Assembly (NCBI RefSeq): GCF_964204865.1
Contig: NC_135263.1
Location: 9,424,001-9,488,000 of the forward strand
Direction of reading: 5' to 3'
Source of the DNA: Styela clava
Taxonomy: Eukaryota
Length of the DNA: 64,000 nt
Positions 8,257 to 30,274 of the stretch are shown here, piece after piece (position 1 is the first letter of the stretch; each line of letters opens with the position of its first letter). A model generated the notes under the pieces. That model saw only the letters and a list, made by a program, of their open reading frames with translations, did not search any database and was not told the origin of the DNA. The translations under genes were made by a program, and so were the position numbers.

Positions 8257-8444
8257 AAGGTTGTATGCGATATCTTCTATACATCGAAAAGTGGCGGAGC
8301 ACTAGAATATATAATTTACAAACTTGATTATTTAATCTAGGCTTTTTTTACTAATACGTATTTAATTACAAATATTAATTTTACTTGCACATATGCAGTT
8401 ACATAATATATAATAACGGAAATCATAGGCGAAATTGTTCGAAA

Positions 8445-9687
<1,243 letters not shown>

Positions 9688-11690
9688 TGTGTATCAGAGC
9701 TAACGTGTATTTTCAGCTTATGGCATTAAGATCATCTGGACCAATATCGCAAAATATGCAGCTCTACATAAAACTTGGTATTACTCTAATATCTAAAGTT
9801 TAGTGTTCTGTTTTTCAGTTTCCTACCAATATTCCTACTGCTAATAAAGCGTGTTATAATCAAAACCTTGTGTCTTAATTGCCTCATATATTTTCTATCA
9901 TTTTATACTTTGGTAAACTAAAATTTATCTAGATTGATATTTCATTTATTTTCTCTACCGGACTGATTCAAAGTTTTCTAACTGTTTAAGTGCATAATGT
10001 ATAAAAGTTTTTTTTAAAGCCTGTACATTTTTATAGGATTTTATATCACATTTATTATCTTATATTTGAGTTTTTTAAAAATTTATATGTTGTAATATAA
10101 ATATTTCATAGTTATTTTATTTCATCTTCAACTATACAGTTAACCACGAATTTTTATAGCCAACAGAATATAAAGTGACTAAATTGTAAAGCAACCAAAT
10201 GAAGTCACGTTTTAACATTTCCAATTAATTGTTGCGTTTTATCGAGTCCTTATAATAAACTGTTGATTTCCTATACAAATTTCATATCGCCGATTTCAAG
10301 CAGGACTGCACCAAATGAGCCATCTTCGTCCATACCCACAATGTCAAGATATAATCCAAGACAACACTTCTTCAAATGTAAAAGATTCTTATTAGTGCAA
10401 TTTAAAAGTTTAGACAATTCCATAAGAGTATTGATAAACGCATATCTAATTTTATCCTCATAAACAGAAATAAACAGAGAGCAACAAAGAGACGTCTTAT
10501 TGTCAAGTTACAACAACGCGCTTGATATACTGTTACTGCATTTTAATACTGAGCCCGACTATTCGTACATTGTATTGTTTAATTGGCACACTAGCTCAAT
10601 AGTGTTGACACTAGGGGCTGAGAAACCTATTTAATTTATTTTTTGATTCAACTCACGCGACCGATTCGGACTTGATTAGTATATACCAAAAAGATGAAAA
10701 TACCGCCGCTCACAATGGGGTATTTTGGTTACTCATCCCAAGACTCGTATGGAAAAAATGAGAAACCAAATCATTGAAAACTAAATACATTAAAAATCTA
10801 TAATTTTTTTTATATAATGTAATATTTTCATTGGGAAAACACCGATACGTAAGTATACCTCGAGGCAATGCACTTCTATATGTAGTTTTTAGGTATGTTT
10901 ATAGAATCTGTTCGGTATAAGACTGAAGTAGACTTGAAGAATACTAGACCTCAGTTGAGAACTATATCATGAGTGTATGCATTGACAGAGGGTGCTAAGA
11001 TTTTGTGTAATTGACTGAACGGCATTTCTCATGCAACGATACTTGTAACGAGATTGTAATAGATTGATAAATATCAATAATGCATTTCCTTTCCACAAAT
11101 TAGTCAGTACATTCTATTGCTGGATCACTCCCGAACTTCTTCAGAAAAAACATATAAGTGTTAAGGTAATATGATGAAGATTTTAGAGTAAAGTTAACGT
11201 GCTACTGTGCTATTTTTCTAGCAAAAGTAATCAATTTTGAAATGTATACACTCTCTTTGTATTTTCTGTTATCTACTACAGAAAAGAAGCAAAAGGGAAA
11301 TAAAATGTAGTTGTAGTAAATGTAGTAAATACATTGTAGTTGAAAAAATACATCCATACATATAGTACAATTGTTAACTAGCAGTAACGCAATATAATCA
11401 GTTCATTATTATGTATAAAATAATTGCTCAAGTCAAACAATAAACGTTCTTTGGATTCAACTTTACCTCTACCCCGCAATCACTTAAGCCTAGTAACAAC
11501 GAGTGACATTCAACATTATCAAAGAATCCACATGCCTCAAGTTGTCACTCTTTATAAAATTGCAGTACTTTATTTCGATTAAATGAGGTTTTTCTCTGAT
11601 TTCGATATTTTATTTTCAACTTGTATACATCTTCGTTATTAGATCGTTATAATTTTTCTATTAATATAATTTCAATTACGAGATTTTAAT

Positions 11691-13193
11691 ATGTTCAGTC
11701 GCTCAATCCTCGCATATATATTTCTTATTATGAGTTGCTCATTTCACATATCGGCATCCAGTTCTGTATGTAAGCAAGTTGAAAACGTTTGGGAAAATTT
11801 GTGTTCTGAAGATAAGGAATCATCTGTTGCTATAGAAATCGCTCAGGGAAGACCAGGGAAAAGAGGCCCACCGGGCCAGAAAGGTGACACAGGAAAAACT
11901 GGCCCACCAGGTCCGCCAGGAAATTGGGATTATGAGGAAATTCAAAAGAAATTTGATCGAAAACTTCAGTCAGGTATTGATTTAATAAAAGGGCTGCGCT
12001 TGTAATACTAATCTAATTACCGGAAGACTCTTATAGATTGACTTCTACACACATTATCGGTAAATGTTGACCATTTGAATTTCAGTCGAAGAAAGACACA
12101 ATAAGGAAACAAGGGAATTGAAAGAAAGAATCAATAGAATGGAAAGCATTATGGAAACTATAAATAAGGAAATGACTACTGCAACTCAAGAAAGTAAAGA
12201 AAACTTATTTGTTACTCTGTTAAACAATTTTTATGAAGTATCGTCACGTTTACGTTGACCATAAATTAAAATGGTTATTTTTATCCTGTTACGATTACGA
12301 TGTGCTGTATGGCGATATAATGATTTGCCTCTCATTTTTTGTAATTGATTTTTTTGAAATTTTAAATAGTGCCAAAGCAGCTTTTCCGATTCCGTTTCAA
12401 ATGGACAAGAGTCAATCGTATTATGGATCAATGTTATTTGATGAGTGAAGCAATAAAACTTTTAATTTATAATTACCATTGGAAAATAATACGATTAATC
12501 AAGTCAATTTCTTGAAAATCATATTGGTCCAATAACGTGATGAGGTTACTTCTATATACCAAATCTTTAGGATGTCTACAGAATGCTTACCATTTCACCA
12601 GCGGTGATCAAATAAAGGATTTTATTCGCGTGAAAACAGTCGTGCCAACCATAACATCTATAACCGTTTGTGCATGGCTGAAACCTCCAAAAGGAAGCGT
12701 CGTCAAAGGCAGCTTGATAAGTTATGCAACATCAGCAAGTTCGAATGCATTTTTAGTTTATTTTAACGAAAAAAACGAACTGCAGGTCTTTCTCAACGGC
12801 GAAGCTAACCACAAGACGATATCTGTGCGCTTGGAAACTAAAACTCATTTTTGTGTATCTGCTGTACCAGTCGCCGGCTTTGCTGATGTATACATCAACG
12901 GAAAACTGTTACTCAGACTGAAATCTACAGAGAAAAGAAATCCTGTAGTTGGAGGAGGTTCTTTGATAATTGGACAAGAGCAAGATTCTGTTGGTGGAGA
13001 TTTTGCAGCATCACAATCGTTTGCTGGCACTATTGAAAGTTTCATGATGTGGTACAAACAGCTAGATTCCAATCAAATAAAAGATTTATATGAAAACAAG
13101 TGTCCATGCTACAAAAAGGACACAAATGCTATTGATGGCAAATTTCTAATCGAAGGCAAAGTTCAATCTGAAATCAAAGTCTGCAAGTACTAA
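11691..13193 (+). CDS. Secreted collagenous pentraxin: signal peptide + C-x10-C + 9 Gly-X-Y triplets + coiled-coil neck + pentraxin domain; exons 11691-11973, 12086-12193, 12571-13193 (337 aa)
   Basis: Exon 1 MFSRSILAYIFL..CKQVENVWENLC..QGRPGKRGPPGQKGDTGKTGPPGPPGNW; exon 2 VEERHNKETRELKERINRMESIME; exon 3 ITVCAWLK..LISYAT..HFCVS..YING..GGSLIIGQEQDSVGGDF..QSFAG..MW, a pentraxin motif set. Both introns are phase-1 GT-AG and the frame is open to TAA. Confidence 0.88.
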
Positions 13194-13316
13194 AACAATT
13201 TATATAAAGCATATATATATGATGCATAAAAATGATATATGTACATGAATAAATATCTAATCAACTGTAAAATTGACAACATTATTGTAAGATTTTGTAT
13301 ATATATATTGCTTATG

Positions 13317-14257
13317 CAGGGTGGTCCAAGATTGCGAGGTTGTCGGGCCGCAAAAACTTTTGAGGATGCCTCGCGGGCCGCAGTCGGAGAAAACCCTAAA
13401 GTGATCGAAACATCGGGAGTTTGCTTACTTTGAATATATTTGAAAATGAGAGTTTATCGTTCTAATCAGATTTTTAAGGAAGATAAATAACGCCTTTTGT
13501 TATTTTAAAATTGCTTCCCGAGAAATTCCGTGGTATTTTCGATATCTTTTCTCATCTTTGGTTTTGTAATGTCTTAAAATTAAATTCTTATGTGACAGAT
13601 AATACATGAAAACACACCAGACAATGTGGTTTACGTTGTTGTGGGCAAGGGAATACGTTTCCTCCCAGTTTACCTCGATCACCTTTTTTACACTCATTGT
13701 ATGATAAATTGTTATATTTGACTAATTTTATGACTTGAAATGGCCAGGTGCTATTGTCAAAGAACGACCAAGTCCGTCTAAGTTGGGACTCCGGAACCAG
13801 CCTAAAAAATTGGTTAGTACGGCGCCAGGTCAGCTCTGTGGATCGTCACTGCTGTCATATGGCCAACGCTTGAAAATAGAGGAGTGTTTTTACTAAATTG
13901 AAGACACTAAACGTCTCTCCAAATGAGGAGTTACTTGATGCGAGCTTAAGGTACGAAGTTCAGATAAAAAGCGCTACTCGTCTCATCGGCTTGGTCCTGT
14001 CTGTACAAGACAATTCATTCTCCTTGTATACCGATCACTGGACGTCTTTCCCATATTGGCACCGTCTTGCCGTTTATAGATACAACGTTGAAATCTCATG
14101 ATTTTAACAAACATCAGTCCCGACATGGGGATTAGGAAAAAGGCTATTCCCGGTTAGAATAGTTTAAAAATAATTTCTACTAATGGTTTAAACATTGATG
14201 CACGCTAAAATTGTTCTGCGGGCCTCACGAAATGTGTCCGCGGTTTGGACCACGCTG
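13317..14257. mobile_element. hAT (Charlie-like) non-autonomous element
   Basis: Termini CAGGGTGGTCCAA / TTGGACCACGCTG. Subterminal GCGGGCCGCA motifs are shared with the 26674 element. Degenerate TSD GCTTAT(A)G. Confidence 0.75.
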
Positions 14258-14905
14258 GCTTATAGTATTCAATTTTATTTAAGCTCCGACTCCTATTAAA
14301 AAACTGACATAAGATAATCATAGCCTATATAGTATCAGGGGTGACCAACACGTCGATCGCGATCGATCGCCACCTCTCGAGCAGTCGATCGCGTCTGGTG
14401 TGAATTTTATTAAAATACCCCCAAAAATTGCCTCCATATAGTTGTGTGTTTTGCAACTGGGAGCATACAGTACTTTACATGCAAAATACAATATACACAT
14501 ACCGTATTTGAGTTTGGGCAAGCCCGATAAAGCATATTATCACGCAATAAATGCAAGTTCTTCCGCTGCCAAGTTTTAAAAATGAAGTGCCGAATATCGC
14601 GTGTCTAGACCAGGGTTATATTGGCTTTTTAACGCCAAATTTCAGAATTTCGGCTTTTTCTGAAACACATTTGGCGTCGGAATTTCTGTTTGGCTTATTC
14701 TTGGCTTTTTTGATGTTCATTCTACTGTCTATTATTAAAATTATTTAAAATACAATACCGGTATTTGTTGTGCAGCAATAGCAAACTCAGCTACTCAACA
14801 TTTAGATTTTCTCCTCACCACAATCAATCAAAATGAAGCCAACAATGACATGTGCTATCGATTAGGTTGGACTATGAGGAAGTCTGACCTTGGTCAGACG
14901 AAACG

Positions 14906-15548
14906 TGTTAGATTTGACCTCGCACGCCTCACACTTTTGTCCATTTATATTTCTCTATTATATTAACTATCCCAGACGAATTATTTTCTATCTTTATTAT
15001 CTTGATTTTCTGTTGACGGTGACTCATTATTGCGCCATAGTGAAGAAATAGGGAGTGAAACTTTCCCCGGGTTTTGAGATACCGGTAACGCTTTCTGACT
15101 CTTTGTTCTATACGGCACTGTGGGATTGCAAAAGTGTCGTTTAGTATTGAGATTTGTCTTGGATATAGTTTACATTAGGAGTGCGGGTTTCGTGAAATCT
15201 GTTATATTAATTTAGCTCAGTAAGGTCCTATTTATTATTGGTTATTATTGCTTGTCATTGTGAATGTTATTTTGTCATTCTTTCATTGGTTGTTTATAGT
15301 GCATCCGTGTCGTTATAAATTAGTTTTATCGTTGGTCTTCAAGTTTCTGTGCTGTAGCAACATTTTACTCATATGTGGAGATTGATGAATACAGTTCGTT
15401 TTCTAAGGATCTCGTTGCCTCTTTACTTTGGTTGTGCAGTTACTAGAAGCTGGGAGATTGCGCATAATTCTTCAAGGCGGGTGCGGGTGCAAATAGGACT
15501 CCACTACAACAACGTTGAGTGGATTGGAATTCACGTTCCAACTTTACA
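14906..15548 (+). repeat. 5' LTR (643 bp)
   Basis: Direct repeat of 24550-25187. By eye the differences are one substitution, one 1-bp indel and one 6-bp indel. Confidence 0.96.
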
Positions 15549-15879
15549 TTGAAATAAAACTAATATTCGATTGACCTACTTTGAAGAACATCTGACTACT
15601 ATTCTCAACAATGGCTTCAAATGTTTCTAAAGATATTGTTGATGAATCGTCTGGTGACATCACCATTCCTGCAGTTCAAGCTCGACAATTTTCATTGGGT
15701 CAAACAACAAAGGATGATCATCTACGTCAAGCAAATGACCATTATGGACAAACTTTTACGGATTTGAATAACATTTTTGCACAACTTATTCTGGATAAGC
15801 AAAATCAACAAAGTGTTACTTTACATTATCAGAAAGTATGCGATCATCTGAACAGTTGGAAAATTTATTTGGAGAATTA

Positions 15880-16712
15880 GGGTGGCTTACCCACTTTGCG
15901 GCCATGACCTATCTGCGACCATCAACTTCATCGATTAAATTAATGCCGAAAAAATTAACGAACCGCGACGATATTTCACACGCGTTATCGTCCACTTATC
16001 CCTCGGAGCTCTGCGAAATTACACTAAAATGCGGCCACAAATAAAAAAGTTACGACCGAAATCCTGACCGAAGAAAAAAAACGGACCATTTTACCATGTC
16101 GCCAACTACCCATTGTTCCCTCAAAGAAGCTTGAAAATTCATACAACTATAAGAGATAAAGAGATGAAACTTGGCAGGTGGGTAGAGTTGTGTTTCTTTT
16201 AACCATCTTTAAAGTTTCGCGTTTCTACCTTTAAAGGAGGGGGAAGTAGGGGGGTGCGCATTTCCAATACGTCAATAAAATCTTTGTCAACTAATTTGCG
16301 ACCACCGTGTTTTTGTCTGTTTGATTGCTGTGATGCGGTGCTTTGTTTATAATTTGAAGAATTTTGTTTGAAATAACCGTGTTCTTAAAATATATGACGG
16401 TCAGAAATGCAATTAGAAGCCCATTTTTTCACGCATGGCTGCGTATGCCCTAGTCTCGACGCAGCAGAAACGATGTTCAAGGCTTGAAATCCGTGATCGC
16501 ACACTGGTCGTTCGGTCGCAAATACGTCTTCAGAGTGTCGTACTTTGGTGGTTTGTATAGCTTTAACCCCTGGTCGTAGAAAGTTAATTCGAAGTTCAGC
16601 GTGTAGAATAAATGCCAATGCACCTACGGTGGAAAAATTAACGTGCTAGAAATATTGTTTTTTGTTTTATAGCGGTTTGAATGAAATCGTCCGCAGACTG
16701 GCTACACCACCC
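15880..16712. mobile_element. Unclassified non-autonomous DNA element (833 bp) with TA target duplication, inserted in BEL gag
   Basis: Imperfect TIRs GGGTGGCTTACCCACTTTGCGG and (reverse complement of right end) GGGTGGTGTAGCCAGTCTGCGG, with TA on both sides. Removing the element plus one TA restores gag ...IYLEN-YILNNGLDQ in frame. Confidence 0.85.
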
Positions 16713-17872
16713 TATATTTTAAATAATGGACTTGATCAACATGTGGCAAAATTACACCTGACTCAGGTTGTGGATAAATTGAAATCATGTGACATGATTT
16801 ATCGCCAATATTTGGACTCCTGTGTTAAAGAAGCCGACATTAGTTACATTTCCAAACGGTCAATATCTCATTTGTCGAAATCTAAATCTTCTTCATCATC
16901 TTATAGAAGACTGGAGAAATCAAGAATGTTAAAACTTGAAGCATTACAAGAAAGAGAACTAGCGGCGCAAAAGCAAAGATTAGCAGAGATGAAAGCAAAG
17001 TTTAAAGAACAACAAGCTCAACTGCTTGATGAACTGTCAAGTGACAGAGACTCTTCTACCTCCAAGTCAATTTTGGATGTTGACACCGTCATTTCAGCAC
17101 AGGATGTCAAATTTAGCCACTCAACTGAAGTGAGTCAGAGACCTAGTTCAGTTCCACTTTTGTCTAACAATAATTTGGAAAATGCAGGTATACGTTCTTA
17201 TTTGAATTCGTCTTTTAATGTTTTACAACCATCGTATTATCCTTTATCTACTGTTAATGCAGTTCAGTCTTCAACCCCATGCAGTGTTGTAGAGTCTAAC
17301 CAATTTTCTAATGCAAATATTTCACAGTTGCCATACAGTGCACCTAATTTTGTTGACAATAATTTTTCTGCCATTATACCTACCCCTGTGATTAGCACAG
17401 CTGTTATTACTGTCCCTGATAGGTTTACGGGGCCGGTGTATTCACAACCTATAATTTCTGTCCCACAGCGGCTCATTGCCCCAGCTGATACTATGTCTTT
17501 TGATTACAATAGGCCAGACATATTTTCTCATGTTAATGTAACTATGCCTGTTGTATCGCAGGCCCATACTAGTGCTTATTTTTCAACATTTTATAGTAGT
17601 TTTCCACAGGCTGGGCCAAATACTATTACCACTGTTAGTAGTTTGCCTCCAGGCCCTGTTTATACAAACTCATCTCGGCAGATAACATCAGTGTTACCTC
17701 CCTTAACAAGACCTGTAGGACCATACTTACCTCATCCTACCATTTCAAATGCCTTGTGCACAAATACTGCCACAATTCCATCTTTCATACCTCCTTATAT
17801 GTCAAGCTCACAATTACCTCACCCTACCGTTATGAGACAACCTTCCTTACCTTCCCCTAACGTTATCCATCA

Positions 17873-19058
17873 TCCAGGGACGGTCGCTGCGCTACCCGCG
17901 AGGGGAAATGTAAGAAAGAGATTTGAGTATAAAGGAGCATATGTTTCATTATGAGTTTGTTGGATGCATCAGGGTCGTTGCGCCGGACGAATGGCGGAAA
18001 TTCGTCCGGCGCGTAGCCCCCAGCCACTTTGGTTCATTAAGTAGTTTAAATAACACGTCATAAACTGATCACTCTTGATGAATGTCGATTTTTATCAATT
18101 TTGAGGTCCGTGATCACTCGACCGTGACGAAATTTTTTAGGCATAAACTTCACTCCAACTACCTTGTACACCCCAAATATGAGACCCCCAACTATTACCG
18201 TTCTCGAGATATGGCAGAAAATCACTGGACCGTGACTGAAGGCTACTAGAAAAAAAATTCCGCTGATACGCGATTGGAATAATTTTTCTGATCATGCCCA
18301 TGCCTTTAGATTATTGATAAGACCTTCCAGAAGCCGGCAAAAGGCCAAAATCACTAGACCGTGACGGAGGCATGGGAGCAAAAAAATTTTCTTAAAAAAG
18401 TATTAAACTAAATTTTCTCAACCTACCTATGTATTTTTTTTTCTCAATATCTCAAATCTTAAGCGCAACATTCCGAACTCACTGGGCCGTTACGGGGAAG
18501 GGGAATCCCCAAAGTTCGGGTGGTAATATATTCTATTAATTAGTCCCTTTGATATTTAGGCATCACTTTGCCCGAAAACCGATTCCAAGTGCTCCTAATC
18601 GCCCAAAAACCATATTACCTAAGTGGGCGTGGCTTTCCACACGTTTTCTCACCACTGAGGGGGCGGTGGCGGTGCCCCCACCCCCAAAAATACTTGGAAA
18701 AATTTCCAATACTCGGGCAAACACTTTCTGGCCCCGGAAACAGAGGCAAACGGCCTCTAAACCCCAAACTCACTCTTGCGTGACTTGACTGACAGCCGAT
18801 TGACCAATAAGCAGCTCCGGGCCACTAAAATCCCGTTTTGGCCCACTTCCTTTGGCCCGATCGCTCCCAAAAATTTTCTGTGTCAGTTTGGTAACTACCC
18901 CCCGCTTCATGCCAAATTTCGTCAGGATCGGCCCGCCAGTTCTCTGGGAAATGGTAATTCAAGTGCTCTCACCTAAGATACTTCGTACCAATGACTTTCG
19001 TGCAACGAATTCTGACTTCAACTTTGCATTCGCACTTTTAGTGCTCTATGTTGCCTGA
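17873..19058. mobile_element. About 1.19-kb non-coding insertion in BEL gag with internal tandem subrepeats (possibly Helentron/HINE-like)
   Basis: Flanked by the direct repeat CCATCA (17867-17872, 19059-19064); excision joins ORFs 16662 and 19048 in frame (PNVIH-QAASKDD). The unit TCACT.GACCGTGAC recurs at about 18114, 18222, 18351, 18478. Terminal hairpin GCACT-TTT-AGTGC. Confidence 0.65.
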
Positions 19059-22000
19059 CCATCAAGCTGCCAGCAAAGATGATTTGTACCTTCTGGGAAG
19101 AAATATTCAACAAGAATTCCGCTTGCCAGCATTGGATAAAGTAGAATTTGCTGGTGATCCATTAGAGTATCATGCATTTATAAAATCTTTCTATAACACA
19201 ATTGGACGTCTCACATCTGATCCTTCTACATTGTTGGCACAATTGTTTGCTCACTGCAAAGGTGAGGCATATGAAGTAATTAAGCACTTGCGAATGGCTG
19301 ATGACCCAGCACAAGCATTTCATGCAGCTAAGGACACTTTAGAATTTCATTTTGGCAATCGATCACTGATCATCAGCACATTTATGAAGCAACTTACTGA
19401 AGGACCGAAAATTCGTGTAAATGACGTCAAAGGACTTTGCAAACTATCATCACAGATGCGTAACTGTTCTATTGTGTTTGACAATTGGAATGCAGGGAAT
19501 TTACTCGATGCCCCAGCATATCTTGTTGCTATCTTTGAACGGTTACCTCCTAATATGCGTACTGACTATGTCATGAATGGCACATGGACTTCATTCACAA
19601 TCCCGTCATTCAATCATTTGCTGAAATTTATTGAGTCTAGAGCTCGTTTGTACAACACATTTTATGGTCGCACTCTGGCAGAATTGGTGACAAAATCATC
19701 TGGTCATAAAGGATACATTAACAAGCGTCCATCGAAGTTTTCTACATTTACCACTTTAAGTACGCCAAAACCGGAACCTAACTTCAAACAAAATTACAAC
19801 AAAACTAATAACTCTGGCAAGAATGGCAAATCTGCTTTGTTTTGCTATCTTTGTAAAGGCGATCACATTCTGATGCGCTGTAACAAATTCCAAGAGAAGA
19901 GCATTTCTAACAGACGACAATTTGTAAAGGACCAGTCTATTTGCTTCAATTGCATGTCATCCAAGAAACATTTTTCTAGCAGTTGTCCTTCAGAGAAGAG
20001 GTGTCTAAAAGAAGGGTGTGGTGGACTTCACCACACTCTGTTACATTTGGAGCAGGTAGCCAAGCAGCCTGCGTTGCATCAGTCGCGTTCTAAGGAACCA
20101 TTACATGCACCTCAAACTGAAACAACCTCTGTGAATTCTATGTCTGTACTCAACACTTTGTGCCCTGTTCGACTCATGGCTGTTGCTGTTGAAATACATT
20201 TACCTGACGCAAGTGATAAGAAGAAAACAATTGCTTTCTTGGATCTAGGATCTCAAAGATCATTTTGCTCTACTCGTCTAGCGAAATCTATTGGCCTTTC
20301 TGGTAAACCAGAGCATTGCATGATCCGCACTACAAATGGTGTTGCTGTTCATACTGGAGAAAGAGTATCATTTCGCCTAAATGGCGTGAATAATACTAAC
20401 ATTGTTGAAGTACACAATGCTTTAACTTTTGACAAAATTCCTGACGTCAGAGATTCATTGCCAAAGCCGGATATAATTGACAAATATCCTCATTTGGATG
20501 GTTTGAAGTTCCCAGATATTGATGGCGATGTTGAACTATTAATTGGGGCAGATACCTTGGGTAATTGTCCATTTACTGATTCCCGAGTCGGACCTCCTGG
20601 TACTCCAGGAGCCTTGCTTACATGTCTTGGATGGTGTCTCTTTGGCAAAGATCCATCAATGAAATCTGATAATAATTCCCTAAATTATATTAACACTTCT
20701 GTGCCTATGATATCTGATGTACAGAATTTACAAAGTGATGTAGCTGTGAATTTTATTTCTACTACTCTTCCATTGCTATCATTTAATGACACTTCATGCG
20801 ATACTTGCATGTCACCTCAAAGTCTTCCAGAAGAAGATCACAATTTGCAGGAGGAAGAAGTTGCATGTGATAATTGCAAAATCATTACCAAGCCGGAAGT
20901 GACAGATTGTCAGAGGACGGAAAGCAGCAAATTGAATGGTTGTGATTTTTTCTTTATTTGTTCCACATTGCATGATGATATCCTGGATGAGAGTGATGTT
21001 AACCGTGAAATTGCTGTCTGTCAAACTTGTGGAAATGATTTTGCTGATATGAATGCAGATCCATTAACAACACAACCTCCTTTGGATGATGAACGAGCTA
21101 CACAAATTATGAATGATACTTTGAAGCGTGTTGACGGACGATTGCAAATTGGTTTATTATGGAAATATGATGATATTAAATTACCGTACAACTATAACAT
21201 GGCTCTCAAACGTCTCATGTCTGTCAAGCGAAGAATGGAGAAGGATGCTGAATTTGCTACAAAGTACATTGAGAAACTGGATGAATATATAAAGAATGGA
21301 TATGCTGAACAGATACCAGAAGATGAATTGGCACCTACAGAGAGAACCTGGTTCATTCCACACCATGCAACAAGACAATCGAAGTTTCGTGTTGTCTTTG
21401 ACAGTTCAGCAGAGTTTGATGGAAAATCACTGAACAAGAATTTACTATCAGGACCTGATTTCAATAACTCATTAGTTGGAGTTCTTCTACGCTTCCGTTT
21501 GAACCCCATTGCTGTGTCGTGTGACATTCGACAGATGTTTCACAGAATATTGGTAAAGCGTGAAGATACACAATCTCTTCGTTTTTTATGGTTTCCTACA
21601 CATGATCTTACAAAACCTGTTTCTCAATTTAGAATGCTATCTCATGCCTTTGGTACTACCTGCTCACCTTCTATTGCAACCTTTGCCCTACGAAAGGTTG
21701 CAGAAGATAATTTATCTAATGCTGATCCGACCGCTGTTCAATGCATTTGCTCTAATTTTTATGTAGATGACGGATTGTTTTCAAAGGATACTGTAGAGGA
21801 GACTTCTACACTAGTTCGACAAACTATTGATTTACTGGCAACAGGAGGTTTTCACTTAACTAAATTTTTAAGCAATGAACCAGAAGTTCTACAATGTGTT
21901 TCTGAGGAAGACAAGGCTCCCGTTGCTCATGCTCTGGAACTAGGCGATGATGCGGTGAGTCGTACTTTAGGATTGAATTGGAATGCAGCCACTGATCAAT

Positions 22001-24549
22001 TTGTTGTTATCGTCAGAATTCAGGAACGTCCTCCTACTCGTCGTGGCATATTATCAATGGTGTCGCAGATATTTGACCCTCTTGGGTATGTTCAACCATT
22101 TGTACTTGCAGCTCGTATCATTCTGCGCAAGATCTTTGTTATGAAGAATTTCAATGGGATGATACAATTACTGGCCCTCTTAGAGACAAATGGGAAGAAT
22201 GGTCATCTAAATTACCTTCATTGAATGGGATATCATTTTGTAGATGCTACAGACCAAAAGGATTTACTCCATCTACTTTTCAGTTACATGTATTTTGTGA
22301 TGCAAGTTCTTTTGCATATGGAACTTGTGCTTATTTGAAAATAATTGACGATACAGGAAACATTCACACTGCATTTGTTAAAGGCTCGTCAAGGGTGGCT
22401 CCAAAGAAAGTTGTAACGATACCACGTCTTGAACTGACTGCAGCGGTTGCTGCTACAGAATTGGCGAGATGCATAAAATTGGAATTGAATGAAGTGATAA
22501 CAGATGTATTTTTCTATACGGATTCAATGAAAGTTCTTCGAATGATAAACAGTCGATCTGAACGTTTCAAAACTTTTGTTGCTAATCGATTGAATACAAT
22601 TCACTTGCTTTCTCAACCTAGACAATGGCATCATGTTGACACTAAGTCTAATCCAGCAGATATTGCCAGTCGTGGACTAATGCCTGACAAGTGCCACAAA
22701 GCTGATTGCTGGTTTAAAGGACCTTCTTTTCTGAGAAGCAAGGAACCATTGAGAAATTCACATATTTCTGAAACAATTGAGGACTCTGAAATATGTTCTG
22801 AAGTGAAAGTTAATTATATTGAGATTTCCTACAAGGACAAGAATTCTACAATACAACAACCTGGACTTATGCTGTTGTTGAAACGTTACTCTAAATTTGA
22901 AAGACTTGTTTCGTCTGTGATATGGCTTCAAAGATTCAAGACTTACATGATTGGGAAATTGCTACATCGTTCTGGTTCTCCAGTTACTGGTTGTTTTACT
23001 GTTGCAGAACGGGAAAATGCAACTATAGATATTGTGAAACTTATACAAGCAGATTCGTTGTCTGCTGAGCTTTGCTATTTTAAAGATATGATGAGTTCGG
23101 GCCCTCCACCTTCTGACAGAAAGAGACTTAAATCGCCATTTGCTAAAGAACTTTTGCAGTGTAATCCATATGTGGCTGATGGCATACTTCGAGTTGGAGG
23201 CAGGCTTCGTCAATCTGAATTACAACCTGATCAAAGGAATCCTGTAATTTTACCCCCATATCACCATGCCACTAGACTTCTGATCGATTATTACCACTGT
23301 GAACATGGACATTGTGGAAGCAATCAAGTACAGGCTTATTTGTTACAAAATATTGGATATTGCATCTTCAGTCAGCGGTGGCAAAAGTTCTTAGAGAATG
23401 CATGCCATGCAAGATTCGATCTGCCAGACCTGGTAAACAATGGATGTCAGATATGCCTGCTGTTAGGCTTTGTACAGGAAATAGACCATTCTTTCACAGC
23501 TTCGTTGATTATTTTGGTCCTATAAAGGTCAAGTTGGGCAGAAGCGAACATAAGCGTTACGGAGTTATATTCACTTGTCTTTCTACTCGAGCAATTCATC
23601 TGGAGGTTGCAGAGAGTTTGGATACCTCTGCATTTTTACAAGCCTTTTTTCGTTTTGTCTCGCGACGTGCAAGACCAGCTCACATGTACTCTGACAATGG
23701 TACGAATTTTATTGCTGGAAGTAAAGCTCTCAAGGATGGAATTACAATTGGAATAAGAAACAAATTGACAATGCTCTTGCACAAAAGGGAATTCAATGGC
23801 ATTTTTCACCACCTCTTGCAAGTCACCAGAATGGAGTTGTTGAAAGATTGATCAGAGAAGTTAAGAAGATTCTGAGGAATATGCTTGATGATAAACCATT
23901 AACCGATTATTCACTTTGGTCTTTTCTGGCTGGAGTGGAATCCATCTTAAATGACAGACCCCTTACCCGAGTAAGTAATGATCCCAGAGACCTCCATGCC
24001 CTGTCACCCAATTCTATTTTACTAAGTAAATTAGATCCTGATCTACCCCCTGCTGTTTTTCTGCGAGCTGATGAGTATAGACAGGGCTATAGACATGTCC
24101 AGCGGTTGTTGGATATGTTTTGGCAGAGATTTACTAGGGAATATTTACCTCTGCTTCAGAAACGCTCAAAGTGGTTTCATCCCTCCCCTAACCTGAAGAC
24201 TGGTAACTTAGTACTTATGTGTGATGACATACTTCCCCGTGGTAGTTGGCCAATGGCTGTTGTGGATGAGGTTTATCCTGGTAGACTAGGCATTGTGCGT
24301 AGGGTGAAGGTACGAACCTCTAAATCTACGTTCATGCGTGATGTTAGGAAGATATGTTCACTTGAACTTGATTAAATGTCTAATTGATGATTATTCATTT
24401 TGTTTCTGTATATTACATTTCACATTTTTCCATACACAATTTCGTATTCATCATTTTCCTATTTGGTTTACTTATATGCTTTGTGTTCGGCTACTTCGAT
24501 CACCTCTTTTATTGAGATAATTATAAGTCTAAATTATCTGGGGCCGGAA

Positions 24550-25187
24550 TGTTAGATTTGACCTCGCACGCCTCACACTTTTGTCCATTTATATTTCTCT
24601 ATTATATTAACAATCCCAGACGAATTATTTTCTATCTTTATTATCTTGATTTTCTGTTGACGGTGACTCATTATTGCGCCATAGTGAAGAAATAGGGAGT
24701 GAAACTTTTCCCCGGGTTTTGAGATAACGCTTTCTGACTCTTTGTTCTATACGGCACTGTGGGATTGCAAAAGTGTCGTTTAGTATTGAGATTTGTCTTG
24801 GATATAGTTTACATTAGGAGTGCGGGTTTCGTGAAATCTGTTATATTAATTTAGCTCAGTAAGGTCCTATTTATTATTGGTTATTATTGCTTGTCATTGT
24901 GAATGTTATTTTGTCATTCTTTCATTGGTTGTTTATAGTGCATCCGTGTCGTTATAAATTAGTTTTATCGTTGGTCTTCAAGTTTCTGTGCTGTAGCAAC
25001 ATTTTACTCATATGTGGAGATTGATGAATACAGTTCGTTTTCTAAGGATCTCGTTGCCTCTTTACTTTGGTTGTGCAGTTACTAGAAGCTGGGAGATTGC
25101 GCATAATTCTTCAAGGCGGGTGCGGGTGCAAATAGGACTCCACTACAACAACGTTGAGTGGATTGGAATTCACGTTCCAACTTTACA
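24550..25187 (+). repeat. 3' LTR (638 bp)
   Basis: TGTTAGATTTGACC...CTTTACA, direct repeat of the 5' LTR. Confidence 0.96.
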
Positions 25188-26673
25188 AAACGTTATAGGA
25201 ATATATTTGTGTTAGTATGCAGCAAGACTATTGAATCACTTAGAATGACATAACAATTGCAGTTTTTGCAGCCGCTCAGACAGATGTTCAAGCAGGCTTC
25301 GTTTTCATAGTTTTGCGTGTTACAGTGTTATTTGTCAGTTTTTAGTTATGTTTCCAAAAAATAGTTGTATGCCTTAATTCAGTAATTGTATTTTGCCTTC
25401 CGAGAAGCTTTAGTTTGGTTGCGGTAATCAAAATTCTCGCAAACGACGTGATTATCTAGGCTAAAATCATCTATCAGTAGACTAAATGTGCAAGCGGCAC
25501 GTGGTTAGATAATTTTAGTAAAAACGATGCCTTCAAAAATGTGAAGCAGTTTATAATCGCCAACACTTCAAACCAATCATAAATTGCAATAGTAGCATAT
25601 CGGGAGAATTTTCTGAAGTATATATATATATATCGCAAGTTAAAGAGAAACATGTGCATTTATTCGTCCTAAAGCGGTATACATGATGTATTGTATATAC
25701 CTGAATTCAAAAAATAGTGCTGTCCGCTTAATATATATTCCCTTTTTTGGCTTTTTGATGTTTTTAAATTTTTTATGTGGATGCCAGCTTAACTGTATTA
25801 TGTCGGATATACATTCTAATTCTGCCATTCAATAATCCTTCTTAGTTGTAAACCCTTAATCGTGCTGAAGTGGAAACCATCATGATAGCAACCTAAACTA
25901 CAAATTTTAGTAGGATTTAACATTTGATGTGGCTCACAAAATCAACTGATGGTTCTGAATCAGCATATTGCGAACTGTGCAAATCGACAATTGTGCTAGG
26001 AGTTTCAAATCATGAGTTTTTTTTATATATACTTGTTAAAATTTTTGACTTTTCTTCGTCTTGATTTAGCTTTTTTTCATCACTTGAATATAGCAAACCT
26101 GGTCTAGAATAGACTGACAAATGATGCTACAATACCTTCCGCAGTATGCGAAAGTTATTGTCTCACTCCACGTGTGATGGATTTTATTCGCAATGGTAGC
26201 AGTGGTATCAAAATGCCCAAGTTGTTCTAATTCTAAGCAATCGAAGAATCGTGTTTGGAGGAAATTGTAAATTAGATACTGAAGTTTGATCAGTCATGTA
26301 ACATTCATAGTTTGAGAAAAAATTGCCATATTGAGTGCCCTTTCTTTTTTGTGTAGGACCTTATTACCGATCAGTCGATCGATCTTTTTTGAAGATTTTA
26401 GTCGATCGCGGTAAGAAGCATGTTGGCCACTCCTGGCCTATACGATAACATTACTGAAACATTATACGAACATAAAAGCTTTTGCAACTCATATAAAAAA
26501 AAGTTGTGACGTGTTAATACAAAAAGTCTTAAAGTTCCGAATAGTCCGAATTTCTGAATTCCTGAAAAGCCTGTTTTTATTGTATATTCTGCAATTCTGC
26601 TTAGTATCTTTCATTCATTCAAAACAAATAAAATTTTAATTGTAAAAACATCATAGTTAATGGTTCTTTAGGC

Positions 26674-27124
26674 CAGGGGTGTGCAACCTTTTTTATTGGC
26701 GGGCCAAATACAAGTAACTGGGTGAAGCCGCGGGCCGCAACTTTATTTAATTTTGACTTTCTGGTAGGTGCAAGCACAAAAATTGCCTATATTATTTATT
26801 GATCTCACGGCATTATTAGGGGTTCTTGCAGAAATAGTAGATTTAAAACGCATAAACTTCTGAAGAAACTGCTATTTAAATTTTTTGTCACACCGACTTC
26901 AAACGAATGCAGTGAGAAACACGTTTTTGTAATATAAATCGTGTATTTTGCAACAGAATTTTGCTAGCTTGTTTTGCTAATATGACTGGTATGGGCTTTG
27001 CGACGAAAAAGAATAAATACTCGTTTTGCGGGTACACCATTCGAAATTGTTATTTCTCCGCGGGCCGCATAACTTCTTCTTGCCGGCCGCATTTGACCCG
27101 AGGGCCGCAGTTTGCACACCCCTG
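26674..27124. mobile_element. hAT (Charlie-like) MITE, 451 bp
   Basis: TIR CAGGGGTGTGCAA / TTGCACACCCCTG; perfect 8-bp TSD CTTTAGGC (26666-26673, 27125-27132). Confidence 0.93.
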
Positions 27125-27701
27125 CTTTAGGCCATTGTAGTCAAAGAGAAAGTAGTAAACGTTTACAGCAATGTTTGTGACTGCCGTATTTGTAACGTTA
27201 TTGTGAATAATAGAAAAGCGACAGCTATAGCAAAGCAACATGTATCATGCTCCCATAAAACGTGTACTGAATCAATGCAATAAAATATTGTATGTTCGGG
27301 ATTGATACTATTTGGACAGATTTATCTTTTAAACAAAGTAATTTGAAATAGTGCCCCAATAAAGGATTTATCATAATAGAATTGTTCAAGCATCAGTTGG
27401 CACCGTGAAAGGAATACAAAATGAATATTGAGTTTCGTTCGACGTGAACAAGATCCTAGATAAGTATCCAACAATGTTTACTAGACCCGTTCATTCTATT
27501 ATATAAATACGAGTGATTTACTAAACTTTGAGTGAGGCAGTGAAAATCGTAATCATTTATGATAAACTGTATTTATTTCGATCATCAAATACTGAAAAAG
27601 TTATTACTTTTTAGCTGCCATAAACAGTTATCTTCAGTTAACCGTTAGTGTAACGTTTGGAAGTAGTAGGCAGTGGAAGTAACATATCAATAAGTCTTAA
27701 A

Positions 27702-28967
27702 ATGTGTCGCCAAATTTTTGCTTTGGTATTAGTCTGCTTAGTTCAGGGACCAACCGCAGCTTTTGATAATAACCCCGCATGTCAACAAATTGAAAACTTT
27801 TACCAAACTCTTTGCTCTCGTGACGGCACACCAGCAGGAGTAACAACTAATGTTGCCTCTTATCAAGGACGTCCGGGCAAGAGAGGTCCGCCAGGACAAA
27901 AGGGTGAAGTTGGTGAAGAAGGCGCATTGGGTCCTGCTGCAATGGTGGATTATTATCGTATAGAATCAGAAATTGAGAGAAAAATTTCATTAGGTAATTA
28001 TTTCATTGCATTAGCTTTGTAATTTAGAATTTTTTATTGCACATTGGCAACTTCCCAAAAGACGAATAAAGTCGTTTTTACGTTTTACAGTTCAAAGACA
28101 ATCGAACGTAAAGTTGAATACGCTGACTGCACAAGTTGAAAATTTGAAGGAAAGAATCAGAACATTGGAACTCAGACAAGGTAATATAGAGTGATAAACT
28201 CAAAAATGAAAACCAATATTAACGAGTGAATTAATAATTTAATAATGTTAAAATTCAATCTGATCGCGAATATTTCGGCTGTTACTTTTCAGGTGTATGT
28301 GATATCAAATACGACGGAAAATGTTTCTGGGTCGAAGTTCGCGATCATTGGTTTTCTGGATATGAAGAAGCAGCCGCATTATGTGCAAAAAAGAACGGAG
28401 CTCCGGCAAATATTTATTCTGCAGAACATTTCAACTTAATTATGCCTTATTTGCGCACAAAAATAATGGCCGGAAGAGAGTACATTCATCTTTGGCTTGG
28501 GATGCGATACAACCCTCGGGTATGATTTGTATAAAGCAAACTCGAATAGAATAGTGACTTCAATGAAATATCAACTATGTGCGTGTGTTATTAAATCCTA
28601 GCTGAATATTTCTACAACATTATTGCAACATTACTAGCAGGCGAGTTATAACAATTCGTTATATTAAACTCGACCTACAAATTCACCAAATATGTGAAGC
28701 TATGAAGCTTCAGAATGATCATAAAACTTTTTCCAGGTGCAGTTTTACGAGCATTTTAATATATTTTTATTTATTCAGACCAATTTGTTGACGCTGTCTG
28801 ACGGAAGACCTGCATTGTTTAAGCAGATGTACCCAGGTTATCCTACTAAAAACGTTAAATATACACACATGACAATCGTGCAAAGAATTCCATCAAGTCT
28901 TACCAACATCGGTTTTCATAATTTCGACCCGATTTTACAAAGGGAGGGCGCTCTTTGTGAAATTTAA
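27702..28967 (+). CDS. Collectin-like protein A (signal peptide, C-x10-C, 8 Gly-X-Y, neck, C-type lectin-like domain); exons 27702-27993, 28091-28180, 28293-28519, 28779-28967 (265 aa)
   Basis: MCRQIFALVLVCLVQG..CQQIENFYQTLC..QGRPGKRGPPGQKGEVG; CTLD CDIKYDGKCFW..YEEAAALC..PANIYS..HLWLGM..ALCEI*. GT-AG junctions, AATAAA about 30 nt after the stop. Confidence 0.9.
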
Positions 28968-29177
28968 TGGATCAATGTTATTTGATGAGTGGAGCAATAA
29001 AACTTTTAATTTATAATTACCATTGGAGGATAATTCGAGTAATTTTGTAGAATAGCGTTATTGTAAATATGTATGTGGTAAAAGCATAAGAATGTACTTT
29101 TATAAATAACAAAAATAAATAGCATGTCAGAAATTGTATAAACTGTCATGTTTTTGAGACTAAGTAGAGGTTGCATG

Positions 29178-30274
29178 CAGTGGCGTGCCTAAAGGGGGGC
29201 GAAGGGGGCAGTCGCCCCGGGCAGCACGTATAGGGGCAGCAGAACGGAGCTTTAGTTTGCGTGTACACGTGTTTTTCTCGACGTGTTATTATTCAATTGG
29301 AAGCTGACATAAGGTGTTCAGACTTTTGTGACTAACTGTGGTGATGGTGAGTCAACAATGGATGTTTCCCGACTATTGAGCCCAGAAAAACTCTTCCCAT
29401 ACTCCACGATTGCAACATTTTTGATGCTCGTTTTCAGTGTGGTTTCGCGAGTTAGTGCCTTAAACTGTTGTTCCTGTAGTACCTTAAAATATGTTTCAAA
29501 CGATTATTTTAATCCAAAATATGTAAACCTGATATTTGGAAGTATCAGTAAAAAAGTTTAGCCTAGTTTTTTTTACAGCTATTTCCAGTCCAGTTTTTGA
29601 TTAGAGTATTGAAGTAGACAGAATAATCATTGAATTATTTGATCCGCACTGAAATTTCCGAAACTCAACCAAAAACTGACAAATATAGCACACAAAAAAG
29701 TGAAAAGGTAATGTTTACAATCATGCGAGGAAATCTGTCTGTGTGGCTACTAAAATGTTTACTGGTGCGTCGCTTTTTCGACATGGAAACAGATATTTTC
29801 CAAAAAATGTTGAAGATTTCATTGCTTTGTTTATTGGGCTCGACTGGAATGTTTTCCATACACTGTTCATTATTCCTAAATATTCATAATTGGCTATTCA
29901 ATTGCTAGTTGCGAAGATCTTTCTCAAAGTTGAAACAGATAAAAACATATTTAATGTCTTCGATGTCAAATCAGGGTCTGTCAAGTTTATCTTTGATCAG
30001 CATCGAAAAGGAATTCCTGACTAACGAGATGAAAGAGCTTGTTGTTCTGACATTTGTAGCGAATGAACATGTTTTTGCTAATAAATGTGTTCGATCTTGT
30101 AAATATGAGTTTGTTTTTAGGTTGATGATTTATTTAATAAAACAAACGTTTACATTTATTCTCATGCATAACAACATCTATTAATTGTTCATTCCACAAA
30201 ATCTTTTTGAATTTAGATATATGCGAATTATCCGAAACTCGCACCGGGCAGCAGGATAGTTTGGCACGCCCCTG
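29178..30274 (+). mobile_element. hAT (Tip100/ZMYM1-like) deletion derivative with a dimerization-domain remnant
   Basis: TIR CAGTGGCGTGCC / GGCACGCCCCTG; perfect 8-bp TSD GTTGCATG (29170-29177, 30275-30282). RRSFSKLKQIKTYLMSSMSNQGLSSLSLISIE (about 29912-30010) matches the hAT C-terminal motif. Confidence 0.9.

What the first reader, a model, noticed from the sequence alone, without database searches (positions are those of the whole stretch)
12423..12499. Relic of a head swap: collectin 3' UTR and polyA signal stranded in intron 2 of the pentraxin gene
Seen: ATGGATCAATGTTATTTGATGAGTGAAGCAATAAAACTTTTAATTTATAATTACCATTGGA (from 12423) matches 28967-29027 with one mismatch, and similarity extends to about 75 bp. 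The 28967 copy starts at the stop codon of collectin A and contains its AATAAA. In the pentraxin gene it lies between the neck exon and the pentraxin exon, where a collectin would end. Inference: a collectin lost its CTLD exons and spliced on to a downstream pentraxin exon, or the tract was recently converted. The intronic AATAAA (12452-12457) could also yield a truncated, head-less stalk isoform.
Basis: partly seen in the sequence, partly recalled or inferred. Interest (0 to 1): 0.75.

Follow-up and report, generated by a model that had tools for sequence, protein, structure and literature searches.

The report
Recent 77-base copy between neighbouring genes
A 77-base piece that follows the stop codon of a sea-squirt lectin gene also sits in an intron of the neighbouring pentraxin gene. 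It looks like a recent patch from DNA-break repair, not an old leftover of the event that gave that gene its pentraxin head.

Summary
Window 12423-12499 and 28967-29043 are 72/77 identical (60/61 in the core), and these are the only two copies in the 377-Mb Styela clava assembly. One copy starts at the last base of collectin A's stop codon. The other lies in intron 2 (12194-12570) of the collagen-stalk pentraxin gene LOC120340922, whose splicing RNA contigs confirm.

The "relic of the head swap" reading does not fit:
- The two stalks are saturated at silent sites (6/17 four-fold sites identical).
- The flanks share nothing.
- No CTLD remnant exists in the pentraxin gene.
- The intron copy sits between two living collectin-A alleles.

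The intron copy looks like an insertion. A perfect 11-base inverted repeat crosses its left junction (10 of 63,700 positions show this) and a 7-base direct repeat flanks it.

Best reading (about 0.58): a recent templated break-repair patch copied from collectin A, with snap-back synthesis at one junction.

RNA contigs run through the AATAAA in both copies, so no polyadenylation there is shown.

Unexplained: the start at the stop codon and the landing in exactly this intron.

My look-ups showed no note of this tract on other DNA.

The parts
12423..12499 (+). Intron copy of the 77-nt tract, in intron 2 of the collagen-stalk pentraxin gene. Core 12423-12483, tail 12484-12499.
   Evidence: Bridged by RNA contig X1 record 4 and by DNA contigs of X6 and X8.
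28967..29043 (+). Collectin A copy. It starts at the last A of the stop codon TAA (28965-28967) and is transcribed as the start of the 3' UTR.
   Evidence: Contigs X1 record 5 and X3 record 8 carry the coding end before it and 180-206 nt after it.
12414..12424 (+). Left arm of a perfect 11-nt inverted repeat (AATCGTATTAT). Nine bases lie outside the homology and two inside.
   Evidence: Only 5 such repeat loci in the 64-kb window, and 10 of 63,700 positions show this arrangement.
12486..12496 (+). Right arm of the inverted repeat (ATAATACGATT), inside the tail of the tract. Two of the four tail differences from collectin A (12491, 12495) lie here.
12410..12416 (+). Left copy of the 7-nt direct repeat AGTCAAT that flanks the inserted block.
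   Evidence: 929 of 63,700 positions show such a flanking repeat, so this is marginal.
12502..12508 (+). Right copy of the 7-nt direct repeat AGTCAAT.
12194..12570 (+). Intron 2 (phase 1) of the pentraxin gene, host of the tract.
   Evidence: GT..AG joint 12193>12571 in X1. NCBI model P0001.
11691..11973 (+). Pentraxin gene exon 1: signal peptide, Cys pair, 8 collagen triplets and the start of the neck.
   Evidence: (PF01391 E 3.9e-5, below cut-off).
12086..12193 (+). Pentraxin gene exon 2 (neck).
   Evidence: Joint 11973>12086 seen in X1 and X3.
12571..13193 (+). Pentraxin gene exon 3: pentraxin domain and stop codon.
   Evidence: PF00354 E 2.7e-29. 100% identical to LOC120340922.
27702..28967 (+). 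Collectin A coding region in four exons: 27702-27993, 28091-28180, 28293-28519, 28779-28967.
   Evidence: The splice sites are read from the sequence. Transcript contigs begin near 28778.
12452..12457 (+). AATAAA inside the intron copy. No 3' end is shown there.
28996..29001 (+). AATAAA inside the collectin A copy. Transcript contigs run through it.

Best explanation
The tract in intron 2 of the pentraxin gene is a young templated patch. A DNA break in the intron was repaired by copying about 75 bases from the start of the 3' UTR of collectin A, the next gene downstream. Collectin A lies 16.5 kb away now, and about 6 kb away before a BEL/Pao retroelement landed between the two genes. When the copying strand came off its template, its 3' end (AT) folded back on its own tail, copied nine more bases, and then annealed through AAT to the other broken end. 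That sequence of steps leaves exactly what is seen: a perfect 11-base inverted repeat across the left junction and a six-base filler (CGTATT). The patch is neutral or nearly so. The intron is still spliced, and the AATAAA it carries is read through. It records a repair event, not the exon shuffling that joined the stalk to the pentraxin head. Shown: the two copies, their youth, the lack of flanking homology, the inverted and direct repeats, the splicing and the read-through. Inferred: the break, the direction of copying, the snap-back step and neutrality.
For: 1. There are only two copies in 377 Mb.
2. The tract is young. The core is 60/61 identical (K 0.017) and the whole is 72/77 (K 0.068). 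That is the scale of the species' 1.72% heterozygosity (PMC7540406, passage read) and of the neighbouring LTR pair (98.8% over 644 bp).
3. The genes themselves are old paralogues. Exon 1 is 56-60% identical in DNA and four-fold sites are 6/17 identical. In the tree of 31 stalk exons, collectin A groups with B, C and the 15.4-Mb cluster (support 86/91) and the pentraxin-gene stalk falls outside.
4. There is no homology beside the tract. Upstream score 26 against shuffles 27.0+-4.0; downstream 30 against 24.6+-3.2.
5. The 3' UTRs of 10 other collectin paralogues tested match neither the intron (z <= 2.1) nor collectin A's UTR (z <= 2.3), against z 41 for the tract itself (29 further paralogue tails listed).
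6. There is an insertion signature at the intron copy only. The 11-nt perfect inverted repeat 12414-12424/12486-12496 is one of 5 such loci in 64 kb, and 10 of 63,700 positions show it in this arrangement. The fold with 20-nt flanks is -24.5 kcal/mol, z -3.26, against z -0.08 for the collectin A copy. The 7-nt direct repeat occurs in this arrangement at 929 of 63,700 positions.
7. In the reads, a second collectin-A allele differs from the intron copy at 12464 and by one deleted base at 12455. The window's allele differs at 12448. So the intron copy lies between the two alleles.
8. Snap-back and templated synthesis at break junctions is a described repair outcome (abstract of PMC5728401 read; others in the listing).
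Against: Two coincidences are left unexplained, and both fit the relic model better. The homology begins within a base or two of collectin A's stop codon. The patch also landed, in the same orientation, in exactly the 377-nt intron where a collectin's 3' end would have been. [quoted passage not shown] The 7-nt direct repeat is only marginally unusual (1.5% of positions). I found the repeats after looking, so their p-values are post hoc. The direction of copying rests on the junction signature alone, because paralogue UTRs gave no outgroup. No empty-site allele was seen in 4 of 4 runs laid. The allele state at 12448 is inferred from its absence in a table, not read directly.
Confidence: 0.58

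Rival explanations
1. True relic. The pentraxin gene descends from a collectin whose CTLD exons were lost, and the first 77 bases of its 3' UTR survived in what became intron 2. Repeated gene conversion with collectin A has kept them nearly identical. The less similar 16-base tail is the eroding edge of the conversion island.
For: The position and orientation are exactly those expected, and the homology starts at the stop codon. The genes are tandem neighbours of one family. The tail is significantly less similar than the core (4/16 against 1/61 differences, p 0.006). The allele pattern would also fit ongoing exchange. The stalk is collectin-like (44-46% identical to collectin stalks), and a sister pairing with collectin A is disfavoured but not rejected (p-AU 0.066).
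Against: No remnant of CTLD exons lies in 11000-15000 (best E 0.33), and the flanks show no homology. Silent sites of the stalks are saturated (6/17). A 77-nt island flanked by unrelated DNA would therefore have had to be kept by conversion over a very long time, which is below the homology lengths that ectopic conversion is known to need (established knowledge, recalled). Other collectin 3' UTRs that diverged later than the stalk split share nothing with it. This model does not explain the inverted repeat across the left junction. All 12 of 12 pentraxin exons checked begin in phase 1 at the same place, and the neck exons end in phase 1. Plain intron-to-intron recombination would therefore suffice for the head swap and would leave no UTR relic.
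Confidence: 0.15
2. Same kind of event but in the opposite direction. The hairpin-forming sequence is native to the pentraxin intron, and 77 bases of it were copied into collectin A just behind its stop codon.
For: Paralogue 3' UTRs show no detectable relation to collectin A's UTR, so that UTR cannot be shown to be the native place. The intron copy equals the inferred common state of the two collectin-A alleles. An imperfect repeat (TTTGTGAAAT / TTTGTAGAAT, 8 of 10) flanks the collectin A copy (read; I estimate it is not significant).
Against: The junction signature (an inverted repeat made of flank plus tail, six-base filler, direct repeat) is at the intron copy and not at collectin A. A copy that took only 2 of the 11 bases of the left arm has no obvious cause.
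Confidence: 0.1
3. A working RNA element shared by the two genes. It would be a 3'-end or regulatory cassette that lets the pentraxin gene make a head-less stalk protein by polyadenylation inside intron 2, and selection would keep it.
For: The tract contains AATAAA. X3 contig record 7 reads through the exon-2 donor to 12283, past an in-frame stop at 12256-12258. Intron 2 has contig cover where intron 1 has almost none.
Against: The read-through contig ends 140 nt before the tract, 13 nt after an ATTAAA at 12265-12270. Neither RNA run covers 12304-12370. X1 record 4 runs through the tract into exon 3. Collectin-A contigs run 180-206 nt past the tract, and no poly(A) loose end is listed. The tract is polymorphic in collectin A (3 differences in 61 nt between alleles, above the 1.72% genome mean), which argues against strong constraint. 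There is no Rfam match and no unusual fold of the tract alone (z -0.44 and 0.34). An AATAAA is expected by chance about once per 850 nt at this base composition (my estimate).
Confidence: 0.08
4. A tiny mobile element (MITE-like, about 85 bases, with inverted ends and a target-site duplication) that happens to have two copies.
For: Inverted repeat and flanking direct repeat at the intron copy. hAT/Buster elements and excision footprints were noted nearby by first readers (untested).
Against: There are only 2 copies in 377 Mb. The collectin A copy lacks the left arm, and its right arm differs at 2 of 11 bases. The sequences between the putative duplications do not match at their ends in the two copies.
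Confidence: 0.06
5. Chance similarity or an assembly error.
For: None found.
Against: E 6e-26 within the window. Both junctions are supported by DNA contigs of two runs, and the whole tract by an RNA contig.
Confidence: 0.01

Closest known systems
Templated insertions at double-strand-break junctions (SD-MMEJ / polymerase-theta end joining, snap-back synthesis)
   Same: A short patch copied from elsewhere. An inverted repeat at the junction that a 2-nt primer plus 9 nt of self-templated synthesis explains. A 3-nt microhomology to the other end. A cluster of mismatches near the end of the copied tract. (Abstract of PMC5728401 read; PMC2943611, PMC4912351 and PMC5068794 seen only in the listing.)
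   Different: The main 77-nt template lies 6-16 kb away rather than within tens of bases. [quoted passage not shown] No enzyme dependence can be tested here.
Ectopic gap repair and gene conversion after transposon excision (P-element or Ac/Ds filler DNA; recalled, no paper read)
   Same: A break in one gene is filled from a nearby non-allelic template. Flanking direct repeats could be the two copies of a target-site duplication left by an excised element.
   Different: No transposon remnant is present. The direct repeat is 7 nt and only marginally unusual. The usual conversion needs flanking homology, which is absent here.
Stranded exons or UTRs inside chimeric genes as fossils of gene fusion (for example jingwei and Sdic in Drosophila; recalled, no paper read)
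   Different: Such fossils are as old as the fusion and decay along with their flanks. This tract is far younger than the divergence of the stalks and has no decayed flanks.
Intronic polyadenylation giving truncated isoforms
   Same: An AATAAA lies in an intron upstream of the last exon, and some intron-2 read-through RNA exists.
   Different: No 3' end is shown at the tract, and contigs cross it.

Membership tests
Templated break-repair insertion (SD-MMEJ / TMEJ type) | The inserted bases have an identifiable template elsewhere in the genome. | tested here: met
   72/77 identity to 28967-29043, the only other copy.
Templated break-repair insertion (SD-MMEJ / TMEJ type) | No homology beyond the patch, which sets it apart from ordinary conversion between paralogous stretches. 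| tested here: met
   Flank alignment scores lie within the shuffles.
Templated break-repair insertion (SD-MMEJ / TMEJ type) | Junction repeats (direct or inverted) and microhomology that a priming-and-synthesis path can explain. | tested here: met
   An 11-nt perfect inverted repeat crosses the left junction: 2-nt AT primer, 9 nt copied, AAT overlap with the flank. The right junction is not resolved.
Templated break-repair insertion (SD-MMEJ / TMEJ type) | An empty (pre-insertion) allele or orthologue exists. | tested here: inconclusive
   No joint skipping the tract in 4 of 4 runs laid.
Templated break-repair insertion (SD-MMEJ / TMEJ type) | Dependence on polymerase theta or the alt-EJ factors. 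| not testable with these tools
   Needs genetics.
Relic of the parent gene's 3' end in a fused gene | The age of the relic matches the age of the parent paralogues. | tested here: not met
   Tract K 0.017-0.068, against saturated four-fold sites (6/17) in exon 1.
Relic of the parent gene's 3' end in a fused gene | Decayed remains of the lost exons, or of more UTR, beside it. | tested here: not met
   tblastn of CTLD exons against 11000-15000 gives best E 0.33, with positive controls at 1e-17 to 1e-32. Flanks carry no signal.
Relic of the parent gene's 3' end in a fused gene | Position and orientation as in the parent gene. | tested here: met
   Downstream of the neck exon, on the same strand, starting at the stop codon of the paralogue.
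Transposable element (MITE-like) | Multiple dispersed copies that share both ends. | tested here: not met
   2 copies only, and the left arm is absent in one.
Functional polyadenylation site | RNA 3' ends 10-30 nt downstream of the hexamer. | tested here: inconclusive
   Contigs run through both hexamers and no poly(A) loose end is listed. Contigs cannot show RNA ends.
Pentraxin (host gene head) | Pentraxin domain. | tested here: met
   PF00354 E 2.7e-29, 102.7 bits against a cut-off of 25.
Collectin (neighbour gene A) | Collagen triplets plus a coiled-coil neck plus a C-type lectin domain. | tested here: inconclusive
   Searched exon by exon. PF01391 E 1.1e-4 (22.3 bits, below the 27.2 cut-off). 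PF00059 E 0.018 on exon 3 (16.2 bits, below 22.6). Nothing on exon 4. Cys pattern and WIGL-like motif seen by eye. No EPN/QPD motif seen. 'Collectin-like' is the safe name.

The most novel reading that the evidence does not exclude
The tract really is the stranded 3' end of the collectin that gave the pentraxin gene its stalk. Exchange with collectin A keeps it alive, and it still acts as a weak intronic terminator that yields a head-less stalk protein (a possible decoy for the stalk's binding partners). It would then be a rare physical trace of how an immune lectin swapped its recognition head.
Probability: 0.08. Interest if true: 0.6.

Novelty: new member of a known kind. Interest (0 to 1): 0.25.

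Why it matters
Taken as a relic, the tract would have been direct evidence for how a collagen-stalked lectin exchanged a C-type lectin head for a pentraxin head. The evidence says it is not such a relic, so it should not be used to argue for that mechanism. The head-swap theme stands without it. The neck exons and all 12 of 12 pentraxin exons checked meet in phase 1. What remains is a clean natural example of a templated repair patch with a snap-back junction in a chordate germ line. That is of modest interest to people who study break-repair scars.

Tried and rejected
Structured RNA gene: Rfam found nothing at the tract. The single hit at E<=1 in 11000-30000 is SCARNA18 at 21713-21799, 22.7 bits against a gathering score of 40. 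Folds of the tract alone are ordinary on both strands.

Shared family 3' UTR: I listed the post-stop tails of 30 collectin-like last exons. Their best local scores to the tract were 14-26, against 154 for collectin A itself. Motifs I thought I saw by eye (GAGCAATAA, TTTCTTGA) did not beat shuffles, so I dropped them.

Cassette exon: 12370-12444 would be an in-frame 75-nt exon with AG and GT ends, but no RNA joint supports it. An open frame of 25 codons is not unusual, so I rejected this.

Operon or trans-splicing reading: rejected, because cis-splicing 12193>12571 is seen and is in frame.

Orthologues: the word search with the pentraxin exon found 2 proteins among 168 candidates, the gene itself and one unnamed 167-aa protein. 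No orthologous locus could be fetched. I did not use the large representative search, because the claim does not rest on absence of relatives.

Closest pentraxin paralogues on C9: no run of 5 or more collagen triplets in 5.6 kb upstream of one of them. Only 1,500 bases upstream were scanned for the other 25 loci.

Supplementary tables of PMC7540406 (expanded gene families) were not opened. They might refine the count of collectin genes but do not bear on the tract.
Full report
WHAT IS THERE. The window comes from Styela clava. The pentraxin exon is 100% identical to NCBI's uncharacterized protein LOC120340922 (337 aa). The quoted string sits at 12423 and its twin at 28967. The two 77-nt stretches are 72/77 identical. 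The differences are at 12448, 12484, 12485, 12491 and 12495, so the first 61 nt differ once and the last 16 nt four times (Fisher p 0.006). In the whole 376.8-Mb assembly these are the only two copies. BLAST at E<=10 finds 2. A pattern search of the core with up to 3 mismatches finds 2 forward, 0 reverse and 0 for the backwards control. So this is neither a high-copy repeat nor chance.

GENE MODELS. I read the splice sites from the sequence and searched every protein piece exon by exon. I left out the joined step.
- Pentraxin gene: exon 1 is 11691-11973 (signal peptide, two Cys, eight collagen triplets, start of the neck). Exon 2 is 12086-12193 (neck). Exon 3 is 12571-13193 (pentraxin domain, PF00354 E 2.7e-29). 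Both introns are phase 1. NCBI's model has the same junctions.
- Collectin A: exons 27702-27993, 28091-28180, 28293-28519 and 28779-28967, with TAA at 28965-28967. The twin therefore begins at the last base of the stop codon.
- 'Collectin' is only weakly supported exon by exon. PF01391 and PF00059 both fall below their cut-offs. I call the gene collectin-like.

READS. One read-laying run covered 11500-13500 with runs X1, X3, X6 and X8, all as Logan contigs.
- X1 and X3 behave as RNA. They carry the GT..AG joints 11973>12086 (both runs) and 12193>12571 (X1 only), and X6 and X8 lack these joints.
- X6 and X8 behave as DNA. Their contigs cover both junctions of the intron copy with 0 differences and break only at 12454-12478, where the two copies share words. 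These runs may come from the assembled sample.
- X1 record 4 (12379-12600) bridges the whole tract and the exon-3 acceptor with 0 differences. That is unspliced RNA which reads through the AATAAA at 12452-12457.
- X3 record 7 reads through the exon-2 donor to 12283. That is past an in-frame stop at 12256-12258 and 13 nt beyond an ATTAAA at 12265-12270.
- Neither RNA run covers 12304-12370.
- Contigs X1 record 5 and X3 record 8 are collectin-A transcripts. They carry the coding end before the tract and 180-206 nt after it, so the AATAAA at 28996-29001 is not an obligatory end.
- No poly(A) loose end is listed at either copy. Contigs cannot show RNA ends, so the head-less isoform is neither shown nor excluded.

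AGE. This is the core of the argument.
- Exon 1 of the pentraxin gene and of collectin A is 60% identical in a global DNA alignment (166/278) and 56% on a codon alignment. Four-fold degenerate sites are identical in only 6 of 17. Silent sites are saturated.
- In a tree of 31 stalk exons, collectin A groups with collectins B and C and the 15.4-15.9-Mb cluster (support 86/91), and the pentraxin-gene stalk lies outside. Forcing it to be sister to collectin A costs 5.7 log-likelihood units, with p-AU 0.066. That is disfavoured but not rejected.
- The 3' UTRs of paralogues that split from collectin A after that point share nothing detectable with collectin A's UTR (z <= 2.3 in 10 of 10 tested) or with intron 2 (z <= 2.1 in 10 of 10). 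The tract itself gives z 41.
- The flanks of the tract show no homology. Upstream the score is 26 against shuffles 27.0+-4.0. Downstream it is 30 against 24.6+-3.2, maximum 35.
- No trace of CTLD exons lies in 11000-15000 (best E 0.33). The same queries find collectins B and C at 1e-17 to 1e-32.
- Against this background the tract has K 0.017 (core) to 0.068 (whole). That is the scale of the species' 1.72% heterozygosity (PMC7540406, passage read) and of the LTR pair next door (98.8% over 644 bp).
- A second collectin-A allele in X1, X3 and X6 differs from the intron copy at 12464 and by one deleted base at 12455. The window's allele differs at 12448. The two alleles therefore differ from each other at three places, and the intron copy differs from each at one or two. 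The state of the second allele at 12448 is inferred from its absence in the difference table.
- A neutral relic as old as the stalk split cannot look like this.

INSERTION SIGNATURE. Folding the intron copy with 20-nt flanks gave -24.5 kcal/mol, z -3.26, with 1 of 200 shuffles as good. The collectin A copy gave z -0.08.
- The cause is a perfect 11-nt inverted repeat, AATCGTATTAT at 12414-12424 and ATAATACGATT at 12486-12496. Its left arm lies nine bases outside the homology and two inside. Its right arm lies in the tail.
- Only 5 loci in the 64-kb window have perfect arms of 11 nt or more with loops of 20-120 nt. Only 10 of 63,700 positions show one in this arrangement around a 77-nt segment.
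- A 7-nt direct repeat AGTCAAT (12410-12416 and 12502-12508) flanks the block. That arrangement occurs at 929 of 63,700 positions, so it is marginal.
- One repair path accounts for the left junction base by base. A strand copying collectin A leftwards ends with the complement of ...AT. It folds back on the AT of its own tail and copies nine bases. It then pairs through AAT with the other broken end, which leaves the six-base filler CGTATT.
- Two of the four tail differences (12491, 12495) lie in the right arm and are mirrored in the left arm. They were therefore already present when the junction was made. They came either from the donor allele or from error-prone copying. No change has hit either arm since.
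[quoted passage not shown] The loop here is longer and the main template more distant than in those assays.

WHAT STAYS UNEXPLAINED. Under the repair-patch reading two facts are coincidences. The homology starts at the stop codon, and the patch lies, in the same orientation, in the one intron where a collectin's 3' end would have been. I estimate them to be jointly about as unlikely as the junction repeats are under the relic reading. What decides between the readings is the age contrast, together with the implausibility of keeping a 77-nt island alive by conversion between otherwise unrelated flanks. I put the repair patch copied from collectin A at 0.58, the relic kept by conversion at 0.15, the reverse direction at 0.10, a working shared RNA element at 0.08, a tiny mobile element at 0.06 and an artefact at 0.01.

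CONTEXT OF THE HEAD SWAP.
- The stalk exon has at least 135 matches in the genome, with 150 of 234 candidates scored. The pentraxin exon has 27 matches.
- Of those 27 pentraxin loci, 2 have a collagen run within the 1,500 bases held upstream: this gene and one on C2 (L009). One of the closest paralogues on C9 has none in 5.6 kb.
- All 12 of 12 pentraxin exons I looked at begin two bases before the same Cys codon, behind an AG, which is phase 1. The neck exons of both genes here also end in phase 1.
- Intron-to-intron recombination between phase-1 introns is therefore enough to explain the fusion and would leave no UTR behind.
- The S. clava genome paper reports expanded collectin/MBL families (passages read). 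Collagenous lectins are known from Styela plicata (review PMC5465252, passages read).

VERDICT. The tract is best read as an ordinary, young break-repair scar. Interest is 0.25. It is a new member of a known kind.

Noticed in passing
window 14906-25187: A 10.3-kb BEL/Pao-type LTR retroelement lies between the pentraxin gene and collectin A. Its direct repeats 14906-15548 and 24550-25187 are 98.8% identical over 644 bp. Internal frames match DUF1759, RVT_1 and Pao peptidase A17 (E 4e-23). Without it the two genes would be about 4.5 kb apart.
   Followed up: partly
L009 (G000:C2:19962745-19966299), minus strand of the locus: A second gene with a collagen stalk (8 triplets, the same GRPGKRG motif, then a neck) about 0.5 kb upstream of a pentraxin exon that is 35-36% identical to the one here. 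The stalk-pentraxin architecture is therefore not unique to this locus.
   Followed up: partly
window 41350-43521 (collectin C; exon 1 at G000:C18:9465420-9465638): Exon 1 of collectin C carries an in-frame TAG, so this gene may be a pseudogene or an allele-specific break.
   Followed up: no
window 13317-13400: A high-copy repeat lies just behind the pentraxin gene. Summed contig depth there is about 18,000 in X6 and about 358,000 in X8, against 53 and about 400 beside it, with many loose ends.
   Followed up: no
window 12194-12283: RNA contig X3 record 7 reads through the exon-2 donor and stops at 12283, 13 nt after an ATTAAA (12265-12270) and just past an in-frame stop (12256-12258). This may be a short head-less transcript that owes nothing to the 77-nt tract. 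Contig ends are not proof.
   Followed up: partly
L003-L018 (12 pentraxin loci of G000): All 12 of 12 pentraxin-domain exons checked start behind an AG, two bases before the same Cys codon (phase 1). The domain is a single-exon, phase-1 module across the family.
   Followed up: yes
window 11500-13300 in runs X6 and X8: Both DNA runs show 0 differences from the window over 1.8 kb of the pentraxin gene, yet X6 carries two collectin-A 3' UTR alleles (depth 29 against 53). This is local homozygosity in a species with 1.72% heterozygosity, or simply the assembled individual.
   Followed up: no
window 8385-9687: Exons of an ARF/ARL-like small GTPase lie upstream of the lectin cluster. This was seen only in the ORF translations and was not searched.
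   Followed up: no
window 29160-29250: A G+C-rich repeat-like stretch lies where both collectin-A transcript contigs end (about 29218 and 29244). The contigs probably break at a repeat, so the true 3' end of collectin A lies at or beyond this point.
   Followed up: no
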